A DNA stretch of 64,000 nt from Dimorphilus gyrociliatus (lineage: Eukaryota > Animalia > Annelida): contig CAJFCJ010000007.1 of NCBI GenBank assembly GCA_904063045.1, positions 306,819-370,818 on the forward strand, read 5' to 3'. Shown here in pieces: positions 2,734 to 7,614 of the stretch. How positions within the stretch are numbered: position 1 is the first letter of the stretch; every line of letters begins with the position of its first letter. Under the pieces are notes generated by a model, which was not told the DNA's origin, ran no database searches, and was given only the letters and a program-made list of their open reading frames with translations. The translations under genes were made by a program, and so were the position numbers.

Positions 2734-4648
2734 ATGAAAAACATGAGTAATCGATTGCGATTAATATCCTTAATTCTTCTCATTTTCTGTTCTTCAATCA
2801 ACTGTAAAAGAAGTGAACAAAAATGCGAAGAAATCACAATTCCTCTCTGCGTTGGAATAGGTTACAATTTTACAAAAATGCCAAACCAGTTCAATCACAT
2901 GAGTCAACATGAAGCTGGTCTGGAGGCTCACCAATTTATCCCTCTGGTGAAAATTGATTGCTCTCCATATTTAAAATTTCTTTTATGCTCTATGTATGTT
3001 CCAATTTGCCTGAAAAATTATCATAAACCTTTACCAGCTTGCCGGAGTGTTTGTTTAAAAGCTCGAAGAGGATGTGAACCTATTATGGAAAGGGTGAGTT
3101 TGGATAAGAGTAAACATAGTATATGTAGTGTTCAATAGATATGCGTGTATACACAGTGTATCCGTTTATGCGCATTTAGTATCCCTAAATACGAAAGAGT
3201 CCATTAACGGTTTATAGTGAAGTGTGCTAAACCGATGATTGTCATTAGGCGCTTAGAAAGGAAGTTGACTTAGTGGTACAATGACGCCACTAACGAGCAA
3301 TGACGTAACCGCCTACTCGTCTAAATGTTCCGGCACTAAACCGATCTTGACCTACTAACCTAATTCTTTTCTCCTTTTCCACTTGAAACAGTATGGATTC
3401 TTCTGGCCGAAGAGAATGGATTGCAACAAATTACCTGTCCACGGAGACACCAAAAACCTGTGCATGCCATACAACGTAACAGAGCCACGCAGGAAACCCG
3501 AAAACTGTCCGTGCAGGTGCAGTGGTTCCTATGTTCCAATAACCAGTAAAAGGAGTATTTTATATAACCAAGTGCGCACTGGAGGAGTTTTAAATTGTGC
3601 TGAATCGTGTCATTCTGCTTTTTTTAAGGATGACGAAAAAACTTTTGCTTCATTTTGGATAGGCTTATGGGGAGCCCTTTGTTGTATTTCCACCCTCATG
3701 ACGGTCAGTACGTTTCTCGTCGATAGAGATCGTTTTCGTTACCCTGAGAGACCAATTGTTTTTTTGTCGGCGTCCTATTTACTTGTTTCTATTGGATACT
3801 TAATTCGGTTAATTGTTGGACACGAAAAGATTGCATGCGATGGAAATGTATTAAGATATGGTTCTACTGGTCCAGCTTTATGCACAGCCGTTTTCTTTCT
3901 TACATACGCTGGAGCAAATGCTGCCTCTGTTTGGTGGGTTATACTTACTTTCACCTGGTTCCTTGCCGCAGGTATTAAATGGGGTCAGGAAGCGATATCG
4001 AGTTACTCTACTTATTTCCATATAACGGCATGGTTCATTCCAATTGCTCAAACCATTGCTGTTCTCTCATTGTCTTTGATCGACGGAGATCCAGTTGCTG
4101 GCATTTGCTCTGTTGGTAATACTTCTTTAGCTTCATTTAGAGGTTTTCTCCTTGCGCCTCAACTCGTCTACTTGATGCTCGGATCTGTCTTTCTTCTAGC
4201 TGGTTTTATGTCATTATTTAGAATACGATCCGTCATCAAAGCTCAAGGACGTTCTAGAACTGATAAACTTGAGAAATTAATGATCAGAATTGGAGTGTTT
4301 AGCGTCCTCTATACATTGCCAGCAGCCACTGTAATAGGTTGTTTATTCTACGAAGAAAGAGAACGGCTGAATTGGCAGAGGTCAATTAATTGCGACTGTA
4401 TTAAGAGGAAGCAACCAGATTTCTCAGTGTTTATGCTTAAATATTTTATGCAACTAGTTGTAGGTACGACTTCCGGATTTTGGATTTGGACTAGTAAGAC
4501 CTTAGACAGTTGGAGAAAATGTTTAACTCATGCCTTCTGCTGGAGAAGACGAAGGGAATTAAGAGAAGGAAGTGTACGAAGTGAAGCAAAATACGCCCCC
4601 TATCGTGCTAATCAAGTAAAATTGTTAACGCCTTTAACGAACGTTTGA
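2734..4648 (+). CDS. FZD5/8: Frizzled 5/8 Wnt receptor, 538 aa, 2 exons
   Basis: join(2734..3093,3392..4648); intron GTGAGT...CAG, phase 0, restores CEPIMER-YGFFWP. Signal peptide, cysteine-rich domain typical of Fz5/8 (CEEITIPLCVGIGYNFTKMPNQFNH...EAGLEAHQF), 7TM region, KTxxxW motif (KTLDSW) and PDZ-type C-terminus LTNV. Confidence 0.96.
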
Positions 4649-4843
4649 CATGCTCAACCGAAGCTTCTTGCCTGTTATCTATACATAGAAAAACGTCACA
4701 GTATTAGCTTAGAAGGTGTTTGCACTGTTTGTTATTTGTCTAATTATTATTGAACTAGTTTTAAATAGAGTACAACTATTTTTTTAGAACTATTTAAAAT
4801 ATTCTTTACTGAAAGATAAACAGTTGGGTCACTAAATTCATGA

Positions 4844-6579
4844 TTACAATTGCATTGTATCCAATACTCGACAGACGTAATCAGAAATGTCCTCATTTTT
4901 ATAATTCTTTATGAAAGTCATTTGCATTAAATCGGGGTAGGAGGGACGGTTTTCAGCCCTTTTTTGCAAACTAAGAAGAAAAAATAACAATGTTTTAATT
5001 AGTTTTGAATGTTGTTTAAGTAAACAAAGCAAATTAATGCTTACCAGCTATTGATGCAGTCGCACATTTCATTTGAAAAGTCAGAATGGGACAAATGAGG
5101 AGGCTCTCCGTCCACAACTTCTTTCAGCATTTCAAACGGCGTCGTCCACCGACTATATGGATATTTACCTTTAGCAATTTCAACAAAAGATACACCTATA
5201 CTCCAAACATCTGAAGCAGTCGTATATTGGTCAGAGCCTGGACCTTCTATTCTCTCTGGAGCCATATATGGTTTACATCCGGCGTCTTTAGTATTTGCAT
5301 AGGAATCGACCAAATTTCCTGATATTCCGAAATCGCAAATTTTTACGGCGCCCTGCCTATTAACCAACATATTGGACGGTTTCACGTCTCGGTGAATGAC
5401 CTTTAGTTCTGTTTTTAAAAAATAGAGAGCGCTCAATATGCAGTAGACCATTTTCCCTAAAACTTTTTCCTTAAGCGGTAAGTTATTCGCATATGCACTC
5501 TTGTAAAATTTATCTAAAGATGTCGACATTAATTCCATGCATATCCAAATCTCACTCTCTCTAAATAGACTACCATAGAACGTGACCACGAATGGACAGC
5601 TAACGCTTCTCATAATTATACTTAAATCGGTTAAAGAACGTTTTTGTTCTGTCCCATTTACAGTAAATGGTATTCGTTTGACTGCCATGAGAGTGCCTGA
5701 AGGGATATGCTGCCATTTCTCCACTTGACCATAAGCTCCTCTACCCAAATTTGAGTTAAGTAATAGCAGATCGCGAAAATCTACTTTGTGTTGTTGACCA
5801 TTTAGCGTAATTGTTGTTTCATCCGTCGGTAAATTTTGCGGTCTACGAGGTGGTTCAGACGGGGGAGGTATTATAGAAAGAGAGTGAACTTTAATTATAT
5901 CAGATTCTTTTGAAAATTCCCCATATCCAGAACTATTGATTGCTCGTACTCGAAATAAATATTTTTTATTCTCTTTCAATTGCAGTATTTTGCATGTTGT
6001 ACTGCCTGCAGTATCCCTCTTCATTTGCTTATTTGGAACGGTTTGCCACTTATTACTGTTTAAGAGACTGATTTGGATTTCATAATCGATTATTGAATCT
6101 GATCCATTATTGACTGGAGTCGACCACTCTATTGTTACCTCTCTTTTACCCTCGTTAATTTTTTCTGGTTTTCCGGGTGCAGAAGGGACACGGTTACTCG
6201 AATCTAAAATCCGGGTGTAAAAAAAACATCAAGATTTAGACACTAGTAGAAACGTAAAAAAAAAGATACGATAGTTTACGGAGCGATCGTAAACATGCTC
6301 TCATCGAACTAGTTATGCGATTGGCTAAATTTCTAGAACGTTGAGCACTTGGATATGATAATCGTTCTTAAGCTAAAACTGCTCATCGATCGCATACTAT
6401 AAATTGACCAGAAGTGAATAAATGTGTTTTTCATTACAATGCTGTCATATATATGCAAGTGATCAGTTGTAAAAGCAAGAAATGACGAGTCAATTAACAG
6501 GTTGGAGCAAATTATAGAACACAGCTGAAATAAGTCGAATCTCACCATCTTTTAGAATGTCGTTATTCGCGTCAGCCAT
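4844..6579 (-). CDS. MAP2K3/6: MKK3/6-type MAP kinase kinase with N-terminal fibronectin type III domain, 439 aa, 3 exons
   Basis: complement(join(4844..4970,5045..6203,6546..6579)), 1320 nt, in frame. Kinase motifs LGRGAYG, MAVKRI, HRDVKPSN and DFGISGNLVDSYANTKDAGCKPYMAPERI (SxAxT activation loop, MKK3/6-like). Fn3 domain PSAPGKP...W...Y...W...YLFRVRAINSSGYGEFS lies in the same exon as the kinase. Confidence 0.92.
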
Positions 6580-7020
6580 TAATAATGATAAACAACTAAT
6601 CCAGCTACTCTAAATACAATTTTTAAAAGAAAATTGAAACAGTTATGCGAATCTAAATCGCATTGAAAATTTGAGGATCTCTCTCATGAGTGATTCACTC
6701 TCAGAATTCCTCTCTCAGCGGAAATGACGACACTATACTACCGGTTATATTTAACTATACCGGTCAAAAGTATTTTAACGAGGTGAAGGTCTCTCTCTTC
6801 GAAAATTTTTCTTTAGAACTATCGACTACACTATTTCGATTCCCTAATTCGTTTAGTACCCAACATTAACTATATCATCCAAATAGTCATATTTCTTCTT
6901 ATTGTCATAGTATCCTATTTCTATTTGGTAAAATTAACTCTAAGCTACAGTCCTACTGCATTTCGGATAATTCTCTGTAGACGCAAAAGTTACAAGTGAA
7001 AAAGTTAAAAGAGCGATATA
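6580..7020. promoter_or_regulatory. Probable bidirectional promoter between the Fn3-MAP2K gene and EXOSC5
   Basis: 441 bp between divergent start codons at 6579 (-) and 7021 (+). Inferred from gene geometry only. Confidence 0.45.
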
Positions 7021-7614
7021 ATGGGCATTTGTGAATTCGGCGTGATTACAAAAGCCGATGGTTCTGCAAGATATATTACTGATAAATCAGATGCAATTTG
7101 TGCTGTATATGGACCAATTGAAGTTAAACTATCTAAAGAGCTAATTGATAGATCTAGTATTGAAGTTCAGGTTTATCCGAAATCGGGTAATACTGGCCCT
7201 CCTGAAAGATTGGTTGAAACCATAATACGGACAACTCTTGACAGTGTTGTTCTGACAAAGTACTATCCAAGATCAGCTATCAGTGTGATTGTACAACTGA
7301 AGCATGACTTTGATCTTTCGTGTGTTTTAAATTCTGTTTGTCTCGCCTTACTCGATGCAGCCATACCAATGAAAACCATGTTTTCTGCGATTTCTGTTTC
7401 TAAATCAGATTTAGACAATTCATGCTTAAATGATTCAACAATGAACTTTGTTCTCGATCGAAACTACAAAGTGCTAACATCGTATAGTAATGGAATATGG
7501 AAAGAAGATGAACTTAAATTGGCCTTAACATTCGCAACCAAAAAAGCGGAATCGATCTTTGAATTTTATAAATCATCTATAGAACGTAAACTGTTGAAAG
7601 AAGAGAGAAGCTGA
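7021..7614 (+). CDS. EXOSC5: Exosome complex component Rrp46 (RNase PH fold), 197 aa, intronless
   Basis: ADGSA, AVYGPIEVKLSKELIDRSSIEV, YPRSAISVIVQ and LNSVCLALLDAAIPM match Rrp46/EXOSC5 motifs. Confidence 0.9.
   Translation: MGICEFGVITKADGSARYITDKSDAICAVYGPIEVKLSKELIDRSSIEVQVYPKSGNTGPPERLVETIIRTTLDSVVLTKYYPRSAISVIVQLKHDFDLSCVLNSVCLALLDAAIPMKTMFSAISVSKSDLDNSCLNDSTMNFVLDRNYKVLTSYSNGIWKEDELKLALTFATKKAESIFEFYKSSIERKLLKEERS

What the first reader, a model, noticed from the sequence alone, without database searches (positions are those of the whole stretch)
4844..6579. MKK3/6 kinase fused to an N-terminal titin/twitchin-like Fn3 domain
Extending the 5041..6024 ORF upstream in frame shows a complete Fn3 domain (VPSAPGKPEKINEGKREVTIEWSTPVNNGSDSIIDYEIQI...KWQTV...CKILQLKENKKYLFRVRAINSSGYGEFSKESD). 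It sits in the same exon as the kinase, so it is not a gene-model merging artefact. A 34-nt ATG exon (6579-6546) joins by a phase-1 GT-AG intron, the phase typical of shuffled Fn3 modules. Canonical MKK3/6 have a short N-terminus with a basic D (docking) motif for p38. Here the Fn3 occupies that position and I see no clear D motif, while the pre-kinase segment, catalytic residues, SxAxT loop and C-terminal DVD-like region are retained. I know of no MAP2K with this architecture. It may be a re-targeted stress kinase, for example cytoskeletal or mechanosensing (inference).
Basis: partly seen in the sequence, partly recalled or inferred. Interest (0 to 1): 0.8.

Follow-up and report, generated by a model that had tools for sequence, protein, structure and literature searches.

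The report
Stress-kinase activator with Fn3 head
A tiny marine worm (Dimorphilus gyrociliatus) and its close relatives make a stress-pathway kinase (MAP2K of the MKK3/6 type) whose usual short docking peptide is replaced by a folded fibronectin type III domain, a design I found in no other organism or paper.

Summary
Window 6579-4844 (minus strand) is a three-exon gene identical to the public model DgyrCDS5668 of the annelid Dimorphilus gyrociliatus (439 aa). One exon encodes a complete Fn3 domain (Pfam 46 bits against a cut-off of 25; predicted fold matches titin Fn3 domains, TM 0.86-0.90). The same exon encodes a catalytically intact MAP2K kinase. Assembled transcript contigs from two lineages have both introns removed exactly as predicted, with Fn3 and kinase contiguous. 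A relative about 18% diverged in DNA keeps the same exons, synteny and Fn3. There the Fn3 has dN/dS 0.10 and the kinase 0.08, with no indels.

The best tree places the kinase in the MKK3/6 clade (98/96 support) on a very long stem, but an MKK4 affinity is not rejected (AU p = 0.22). The basic docking (D/KIM) motif of canonical MKK3/6 is absent; the pre-kinase hairpin, S-x-A-x-T loop and C-terminal tail remain. The last ancestral intron is kept, so this is not a retrocopy.

Word-index, exhaustive HMMER and ESM Atlas searches found no other Fn3-MAP2K, and no paper describes one. The function is inferred: the Fn3 probably acts as a recruitment module, like the PB1 domain of MEK5. The cytoskeletal or mechanosensing idea is untested. 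It is a new variant of a known kind, of moderate interest.

The parts
6643..6687 (-). Conserved 14-codon upstream ORF in the 5' leader. It is accessory and its function is unknown.
   Evidence: 44 of 45 nt are identical in the relative at L001:7378-7422. The leader 6546-6700 is covered by RNA contigs X2 record 9 and X3 record 10.
6546..6579 (-). Exon 1: start codon plus 11 and one-third codons, acidic, with no basic docking cluster.
   Evidence: The splice 6546 to 6203 is seen in contigs X6 record 14 and X3 record 10. The exon is conserved in L001:7487-7520.
6204..6545 (-). Intron 1: 342 nt, GT-AG, phase 1. It has no counterpart in canonical spiralian MKK3/6 genes.
   Evidence: It is 70% identical, with indels, to the 343-nt intron of the relative. 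Paralvinella and Lingula have no intron at this position.
5884..6189 (-). Fibronectin type III domain, residues 17-118 (Pfam match 20-112).
   Evidence: Pfam fn3 scores 46.4-46.8 bits against a cut-off of 25. The AlphaFold2 model has pLDDT above 90 over residues 21-115 and is a beta sandwich. Foldseek top hits are titin Fn3 domains, TM 0.86-0.90. dN/dS is 0.105.
5818..5883 (-). Proline-rich flexible linker, residues 119-140. It is partly homologous to the segment just before PPR-x-L-D in canonical MKK3/6.
   Evidence: pLDDT is below 50 for residues 118-128 in the full-length model.
5770..5817 (-). Pre-kinase beta hairpin, residues 141-156, retained from canonical MKK3/6.
   Evidence: Strands 141-145 and 148-152 appear in the model. 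The segment aligns to ATITIG..F.V.ADDL of canonical proteins. The MKK6 chain match starts at this segment.
5045..5754 (-). Kinase domain, first part (residues 162-398). It includes K187, H282-R283-D284, D302-F303-G304 and the activation loop S312-x-A-x-T316 at 5290-5304.
   Evidence: Pfam Pkinase scores 176 bits. These residues are in invariant columns.
4971..5044 (-). Intron 2: 74 nt, GT-AG, phase 2 inside the Cys398 codon. It is an ancestral MKK3/6 intron.
   Evidence: The splice is seen in contigs of X1, X6 and X3. Paralvinella's last intron has the same position and phase.
4844..4970 (-). Exon 3: end of the kinase domain (to residue 418), the C-terminal docking-type tail (419-439) and the stop codon (4844-4846).
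   Evidence: dN/dS of the tail is 0.07.

Best explanation
This is a real, expressed gene kept under purifying selection in Dimorphilus gyrociliatus and close relatives. It encodes a cytosolic MAP kinase kinase of the MKK3/6 clade. The N-terminal docking peptide (D motif/KIM) has been replaced by one titin-type Fn3 domain.

Shown: the order of parts is a short acidic N-terminus, the Fn3, a flexible proline-rich linker of about 22 residues, the ancestral pre-kinase hairpin, a catalytically intact kinase with an S-x-A-x-T activation loop, and the ancestral C-terminal tail. The gene descends from the ordinary MKK3/6 gene at the DNA level. It keeps the last ancestral intron, has lost the other six introns seen in Paralvinella, and has gained a new phase-1 intron in front of the Fn3.

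Inferred: the kinase is still switched on by a MAP3K at S312/T316 and still phosphorylates a p38-type MAPK. The Fn3 serves as a protein-binding recruitment module. It would tether the kinase to its substrate, its activator or a scaffold in place of the lost linear docking motif, as the N-terminal PB1 domain does for MEK5. I put the structural and evolutionary part at about 0.9 and the recruitment-module function at about 0.4.
For: The gene model equals public DgyrCDS5668. Fn3 and kinase both pass Pfam thresholds in this species and in the relative. Spliced transcript contigs from the same lineage (100% identical) and from a lineage about 93% identical carry Fn3 and kinase contiguously, and environmental metatranscriptome contigs also match. 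Syntenic loci in three runs of a more distant relative keep exon 1, the intron and the Fn3. dN/dS is 0.105 for the Fn3 and 0.079 for the kinase at dS about 0.9. The part upstream of the internal Met has dN/dS 0.12 (p = 1.5e-5), and there are no indels in 439 codons. The tree places the pair inside a 98/96-supported set with named MKK3/6, apart from MKK4 and MKK7. Canonical N-termini have a basic cluster plus L-x-hydrophobic motif; this protein has none. Catalytic and activation-loop residues are invariant. Intron 2 is at the same site and phase as Paralvinella's last intron. The linker is modelled as disordered and the hairpin as ordered. The KIM, linker length and alpha-G helix jointly set MKK6-p38 specificity (bioRxiv 10.1101/2022.07.04.498667). 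MEK5 has a PB1 domain about 50 residues before its kinase that drives recruitment (PMC12780230).
Against: There is no functional or interaction data. The substrate and the partner of the Fn3 are unknown. The kinase sits on a stem of about 1.2 substitutions per site, and 16 residues invariant in nine canonical MKK3/6 are changed, so specificity may have shifted. A grouping with MKK4 is not rejected (AU p = 0.22). Contigs cannot exclude minor transcripts that start downstream. I could not test whether the genome holds a second, canonical MKK3/6.
Confidence: 0.7

Rival explanations
1. It is an extra, neofunctionalised paralogue. A canonical MKK3/6 with a D motif exists elsewhere in the genome and serves p38, while this fast-evolving Fn3 copy has acquired a different substrate, location or scaffold role.
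For: The stem branch is very long (about 1.2 substitutions per site) and 16 otherwise invariant residues are changed, 14 of them shared with the relative. There is no shared microsynteny with Paralvinella or Helobdella MKK3/6.
Against: No second Dimorphilus MKK3/6 appears among the 120 best word-search hits. The only paralogous transcript seen on the reads fits MKK7/hemipterous. The conserved last intron is equally compatible with orthology. None of these is a real test.
Confidence: 0.3
2. The kinase belongs to the MKK4 class (JNK/p38 dual activator) rather than MKK3/6, and its placement is distorted by long-branch effects.
For: On the same span, solved MKK4 and MKK6 chains score almost equally (288 against 290 bits). 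The AU test does not reject a clade with MKK4 (p = 0.22).
Against: All 118 non-dinophilid top hits that carry a name are MKK3/6/licorne. The careful tree gives 98/96 for the set that excludes MKK4. The pre-kinase segment aligns to MKK3/6.
Confidence: 0.15
3. The Fn3 is an intramolecular regulator, for example an autoinhibitory or stabilising cap on the kinase, rather than a recruitment module.
For: Strong purifying selection shows only that the domain matters, not how. Titin-family kinases are regulated by flanking segments (general knowledge, not tested here).
Against: The linker between the Fn3 and the hairpin is modelled as disordered (pLDDT below 50 for residues 118-128). No contact information was available.
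Confidence: 0.1
4. It is an artefact: a merged gene model, a chimeric assembly, or an Fn3-like stretch that is really untranslated leader.
For: None found.
Against: There is one continuous exon. The arrangement is the same in independent assemblies of three lineages and in spliced transcript contigs. The coding-type substitution pattern extends upstream of the internal Met.
Confidence: 0.02

Closest known systems
Canonical animal MKK3/MKK6/licorne (MAP2K, STE7 family)
   Same: The kinase domain is 49-60% identical. The pre-kinase hairpin, catalytic residues, S-x-A-x-T activation loop and C-terminal tail are shared, and so is the last intron position.
   Different: Canonical proteins are about 330-340 aa with a disordered N-terminus that begins with a basic D/KIM motif. 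Here that motif is missing and a folded Fn3 of about 100 residues sits in its place. The kinase is unusually diverged.
MEK5 (MAP2K5) with its N-terminal PB1 domain
   Same: It is a MAP2K with a folded N-terminal protein-interaction domain about 50 residues before the kinase, used for recruitment (PMC12780230). In the Atlas structure search the MEK5 cluster aligns over residues 30-439.
   Different: The fold differs (PB1, not Fn3) and so does the MAP2K subfamily. No PB1 is detected here. This is an analogy, not homology.
Plant MKK3-type MAP2K with an NTF2-like domain
   Same: It is another MAP2K lineage that carries an accessory folded domain of unknown role (PMC5177658).
   Different: The domain is C-terminal and NTF2-like, the D site is retained, and the lineage is found across plants rather than in one small animal group.
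Titin/twitchin/MLCK-type kinases (Fn3 directly before a CAMK-type kinase)
   Same: The order is Fn3, linker, kinase. Twitchin aligns collinearly over residues 16-423. Language-model features place the protein next to MLCK/obscurin clusters. The nearest solved Fn3 structures are from titin.
   Different: The kinase here is STE7/MAP2K, and twitchin kinases score only 26-48 bits against it. There are no Ig domains. The linker is MKK3/6-derived. In the terms of PMC4177888 this is a 'hybrid/rogue' kinase.

Membership tests
MAP2K (STE7), MKK3/6 subfamily | Complete protein kinase domain with the catalytic Lys, HRD, DFG and APE motifs | tested here: met
   Pkinase scores 176 bits over profile positions 5-263 of 263. 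K187, H282-R283-D284, D302-F303-G304 and P327-E328 are in invariant columns.
MAP2K (STE7), MKK3/6 subfamily | Activation loop S-x-A-x-T phosphorylated by MAP3Ks | tested here: met
   The motif is S312-Y-A-N-T316 here and S-V-A-N-T in the relative. S, A and T are invariant columns. Phosphorylation itself was not tested.
MAP2K (STE7), MKK3/6 subfamily | Kinase domain groups with MKK3/6 rather than MKK4 or MKK7 | tested here: met
   The IQ-TREE careful tree gives 98/96 for the set holding 16 named MKK3/6 plus the dinophilid pair, and MKK4 and MKK7 groups were identified by name. Top database hits are all MKK3/6.
MAP2K (STE7), MKK3/6 subfamily | Alternative membership in MKK4 statistically excluded | tested here: inconclusive
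   The AU test of a clade with MKK4 gives delta lnL 9.99, p = 0.22. PDB scores for MKK4 and MKK6 are nearly equal.
MAP2K (STE7), MKK3/6 subfamily | N-terminal D motif/KIM (basic cluster, then hydrophobic-x-hydrophobic) at the start of a disordered N-terminus | tested here: not met
   Nine canonical proteins have it and this protein does not. Only a possible remnant, K-V-H-S-L-S-I, follows the Fn3. A K-R-E-V-T-I match lies inside a folded Fn3 strand.
MAP2K (STE7), MKK3/6 subfamily | C-terminal docking-type tail after the kinase domain | tested here: met
   Residues 415-439 align to canonical tails, with F417 invariant and D425 nearly invariant. dN/dS is 0.07.
MAP2K (STE7), MKK3/6 subfamily | Phosphorylates the T-G-Y loop of p38 MAPK | not testable with these tools
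   This needs a kinase assay.
Fibronectin type III domain (PF00041) | Passes the Pfam gathering score over the full profile | tested here: met
   46.4-46.8 bits here and 48.0 bits in the relative, against a cut-off of 25, over profile positions 2-81/82 of 84.
Fibronectin type III domain (PF00041) | Beta-sandwich fold like solved Fn3 domains | tested here: met
   The AlphaFold2 model has pLDDT above 90 over residues 21-115. Foldseek matches titin Fn3 domains at E 6.5e-11 with TM 0.86-0.90 by target.
Titin/twitchin/MLCK kinase family | CAMK-type kinase domain related to titin-family kinases | tested here: not met
   Twitchin-like giants match the kinase part at only 26-48 bits, against more than 300 bits for MAP2Ks.
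MEK5-type MAP2K | N-terminal PB1 domain | tested here: not met
   Pfam finds only fn3 and kinase families.

The most novel reading that the evidence does not exclude
Docking between the MAP2K and MAPK tiers has been rewired in this worm lineage from a linear motif to a folded domain. The Fn3 would bind the p38-type kinase directly. It would have co-evolved with the unusual p38 genes that this scan noted in the same genome: alternative exons that swap the docking groove, and a p38-like gene with an eroded docking surface. Those notes are unchecked.
Probability: 0.12. Interest if true: 0.8.

Novelty: new variant of a known kind. Interest (0 to 1): 0.5.

Why it matters
MAP2K-MAPK specificity is thought to rest on three things: a short N-terminal docking motif, a linker of tuned length, and the alpha-G helix contact. 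Here evolution has deleted the motif and installed a folded domain, yet the gene has stayed under strong purifying selection in at least three lineages. That makes it a natural experiment on how dispensable or replaceable the docking motif is. It also adds a third kind of accessory domain to the few known on MAP2Ks (PB1 on MEK5, NTF2-like on plant MKK3). Finally, it is a clean example of domain gain within an otherwise shrinking, intron-losing gene in a miniature genome. Its reach is limited because it is confined to one small annelid group and no function has been shown.

Tried and rejected
1. **Processed retrocopy origin.** The idea came from there being only 3 exons against 8 in Paralvinella. 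It is rejected because intron 2 sits at the ancestral site and phase.
2. **A second MKK3/6 seen on the reads.** A paralogous transcript contig touched 5527-5547 and 5672-5698. Its flanking peptides fit MKK7/hemipterous best, so it says nothing about a second MKK3/6.
3. **Synteny as an orthology test.** Paralvinella and Helobdella MKK3/6 have unrelated neighbours, so this was uninformative.
4. **Identifying the Fn3 donor.** The best single-domain matches are only about 40-49 bits and are spread over twitchins, unnamed giants and a bacterial multi-Fn3 protein. No donor was identified.
5. **The exhaustive HMMER search.** The listing was swamped by giant multi-Fn3 proteins. I rescanned all fetched proteins locally for Fn3 plus a MAP2K-like kinase; only the two dinophilid proteins have both.
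6. **A failed alignment.** A mixed alignment of full-length MAP2Ks and Fn3 pieces (A2) stretched the Fn3 pieces into the kinase and was discarded. The Fn3 and the full-length protein were folded separately.
7. **A hidden D motif inside the Fn3** (K-R-E-V-T-I). It is rejected because it lies in a confidently folded strand.
8. **Scan-notebook searches for other MAP2K genes of this genome** found none.
9. **The third word search.** I ran no further search on looking for a second Dimorphilus MKK3/6, because only 120 hits are listed and the result would probably not have been conclusive.

Full report
**What is there.** The window is AT-rich animal DNA (32% GC). On the minus strand, three exons (6579-6546, 6203-5045, 4970-4844) join through GT-AG introns. 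Intron 1 is 342 nt and phase 1; intron 2 is 74 nt and phase 2. The result is a 1320-nt reading frame. The 439-aa product is identical to the public protein DgyrCDS5668 of the annelid Dimorphilus gyrociliatus, which UniRef names only 'mitogen-activated protein kinase kinase'. Its neighbours are a Frizzled gene (convergent, 3383-4648 on the plus strand) and an RNase PH-domain gene (divergent, 7021-7614 on the plus strand).

**The two domains.**
- Pfam finds fn3 (PF00041) at 46.4-46.8 bits against a cut-off of 25. The match covers profile positions 2-81 of 84 and residues 20-112.
- Pfam finds a full Pkinase domain at residues 162-418, 176 bits.
- With 55 Fn3 homologues as alignment, AlphaFold2 folds residues 21-115 as a beta sandwich with pLDDT above 90.
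- Foldseek's best solved matches are titin A-band Fn3 domains and myomesin, with TM 0.86-0.90 by target. Sequence search of the PDB gives the same families.
- The N-terminus is acidic and has no hydrophobic stretch, so by inspection I read this as an intracellular Fn3.
- In the full-length model residues 118-128 are disordered (pLDDT below 50). Residues 141-152 form a hairpin that leads into a well-modelled kinase.

**It is transcribed and spliced as predicted.** The reads tool laid contigs of four runs on 4750-6700.
- A 3512-nt contig of run X6 is 100% identical. It skips exactly 6204-6545 and 4971-5044 and is continuous across the whole of exon 2.
- A 3821-nt contig of run X3 has the same two joints. 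It has 76 substitutions and no gaps in the 1159 nt of exon 2, so it comes from a relative about 93% identical. X3's RNA status is a guess on record, but the joints show processed RNA.
- Two declared metatranscriptomes (marine and coral-associated) also hold matching pieces. These include the intron-2 joint and a piece that starts exactly at the exon-1 boundary.
- Contigs cannot show transcript starts, so a minor downstream start is not excluded.
- The only Met between the start of the Fn3 and the kinase (M72) lies inside the Fn3. The next Met is in kinase strand beta-3. A complete kinase therefore cannot be translated without at least part of the Fn3.

**It is conserved and constrained.** Protein P0002 (87% identical) led to three Logan contigs of a more distant relative. 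They carry the same neighbours: ribosomal L2, RNase PH, the kinase and Frizzled. That locus keeps exon 1, an intron of 343 nt, the Fn3 and both other exons, and gives a 439-aa protein without a single indel.

| Region | dN/dS |
|---|---|
| Fn3 | 0.105 |
| Linker | 0.14 |
| Kinase | 0.079 |
| C-terminal tail | 0.07 |

- These values were computed by the Nei-Gojobori method at dS about 0.9.
- The Fn3 half upstream of M72 has dN/dS 0.12, with far fewer replacement changes than neutral expectation (p = 1.5e-5). It is therefore translated, not leader.
- The introns are only 56-70% identical and carry indels.
- The relative's Fn3 also passes the Pfam cut-off, at 48 bits.

**Which MAP2K it is.**
- All named hits after the two dinophilid proteins are MKK3/6/licorne at 53-60% identity.
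- Solved MKK6 and MKK4 chains score almost the same on the same span, so I built a tree from 64 kinase domains. I named the clades by cluster look-up: MKK4 (fish, lizard, shrimp, rotifer) and MKK7/hemipterous.
- The careful IQ-TREE run puts the dinophilid pair in a set with all 16 named MKK3/6, supported 98/96, apart from MKK4 (100/98) and MKK7.
- The pair sits on a stem of about 1.2 substitutions per site. An AU test does not reject a clade with MKK4 (p = 0.22).
- Sixteen residues invariant in nine canonical bilaterian MKK3/6 are changed here, and 14 of these changes are shared with the relative.
- The catalytic Lys, HRD, DFG, APE and the S312-x-A-x-T316 loop are intact.

**What happened at the N-terminus.**
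- Canonical proteins begin with a few residues and then a basic cluster followed by L-x-hydrophobic (the D motif/KIM). A proline-rich stretch follows, then PPR-(N/D)-L-D, then the ATITIG..F.V.ADDL hairpin.
- This protein keeps the segment from the proline-rich stretch onward. It has exon 1 plus the Fn3 where the basic cluster should be.
- Only a weak K-V-H-S-L-S-I string follows the Fn3. A K-R-E-V-T-I string lies inside a folded strand.
- Work on human MKK6-p38alpha shows that the KIM, the linker length and the alpha-G helix together set activation and specificity. Changing any of them lowers signalling (bioRxiv 10.1101/2022.07.04.498667). Replacing the KIM with a domain is therefore a substantial change.

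**How the gene arose.**
- The Paralvinella MKK3/6 gene has 8 exons, and Lingula shares the mapped intron sites.
- Dimorphilus intron 2 splits the Cys398 codon in phase 2, exactly as Paralvinella's last intron does. The gene is therefore a DNA-level descendant of the ordinary gene, not a retrocopy.
- The other six Paralvinella introns are gone.
- The ancestral first intron, just before PPR-x-L-D, is absent. Intron 1 (phase 1, after codon 11) has no counterpart in the canonical genes.
- A phase-1 boundary a few residues before the P-x-x-P start of an Fn3 is what module exons usually show (general knowledge). Gain of a 5' exon plus an Fn3 exon, followed by intron loss, is therefore plausible but not shown.
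- No donor could be named. The best single Fn3 matches reach only 40-49 bits, in twitchins, unnamed giants and a bacterial multi-Fn3 protein.

**Is the architecture known?**
- A word search on the Fn3 region found only the two dinophilid proteins and one unrelated Fn3/transglutaminase-like protein.
- The exhaustive HMMER search of 1.84 billion representatives listed giant multi-Fn3 proteins and plain MAP2Ks.
- A local rescan of all 269 fetched proteins found an Fn3 together with a MAP2K-like kinase only in the dinophilid pair. Three twitchin-like giants have an Fn3 plus a distant CAMK-type kinase.
- The ESM Atlas has no cluster with this design. By learned features the protein sits beside MLCK/obscurin clusters, and by structure beside MAP2K clusters.
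- Paper searches found nothing on an Fn3-MAP2K or on MAPK signalling in Dimorphilus.
- The concept of 'hybrid/rogue' kinases covers such cases (PMC4177888).
- Accessory domains on MAP2Ks are known: PB1 on MEK5, about 50 residues before the kinase and used for recruitment (PMC12780230), and an NTF2-like domain on plant MKK3 (PMC5177658).
- This is therefore a new variant of a known kind. The protein is already deposited but not described in the searched literature.

**Mechanism.**
- Shown: an intact, selected Fn3, flexible linker, hairpin, kinase and tail.
- Inferred: the protein is activated at S312/T316 by a MAP3K and acts on a p38-type MAPK. The Fn3 serves as a recruitment module in place of the lost docking motif, by analogy with the MEK5 PB1 domain.
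That resemblance is not specific, and the idea remains untested.
- Earlier notes of this scan, which I did not check, report that the same genome has a p38 gene with mutually exclusive exons that swap the docking groove, and p38-like genes with S-G-Y loops and an eroded docking surface. That makes co-evolution of both sides of the docking interface worth testing.

**Open points.** I could not search the rest of the genome, so I do not know whether a canonical MKK3/6 also exists. The paralogous transcript seen on the reads is MKK7-like.

Noticed in passing
window 6643-6687 (-); L001:7378-7422: There is a 14-codon upstream ORF in the 5' leader of the gene. It is 44 of 45 nt identical in a relative whose coding sequence differs by about 18%. 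The 200 nt upstream of the start codon are 85% identical, more conserved than the introns. This may be a regulatory uORF or a shared bidirectional promoter with the RNase PH gene at 7021.
   Followed up: partly
window 5527-5547 and 5672-5698 (reads): A second, more deeply covered transcript contig in runs X6, X3 and X1 matches only these two conserved stretches. Its flanking peptides fit invertebrate MKK7/hemipterous best, so it is probably the worm's MKK7 orthologue.
   Followed up: partly
window 4644-4843 and 3383-4648 (+): The Frizzled gene ends 195 nt from the kinase stop codon, in convergent orientation. The 200 nt after the kinase stop are 92% identical in the relative. The transcript contigs run on for about 2 kb past the kinase 3' end, so the 3' UTRs may overlap or the contigs may merge two genes.
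   Followed up: no
window 5045-6203 compared with L004 and L005: There is heavy intron loss. Paralvinella MKK3/6 has 8 exons over 9.5 kb with positions shared by Lingula, while the Dimorphilus gene keeps only the last ancestral intron.
   Followed up: yes
other pieces of the same genome (scan notes s1-080414, s1-083159, s1-084485): Earlier notes report a p38 gene with mutually exclusive exons that swap the hinge and docking groove. They also report p38-like genes with an S-G-Y loop, one of them intronless with an eroded docking surface. These may be linked to a MAP2K that lacks a docking motif.
   Followed up: no
proteins P0003 (Acipenser, 443 aa) and P0004 (Leptotrombidium, 654 aa): These public MKK3/6 models contain two tandem or partly repeated kinase domains. 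They are probably merged tandem genes or model errors, and P0003 is flagged UNVERIFIED_CONTAM by its source.
   Followed up: no
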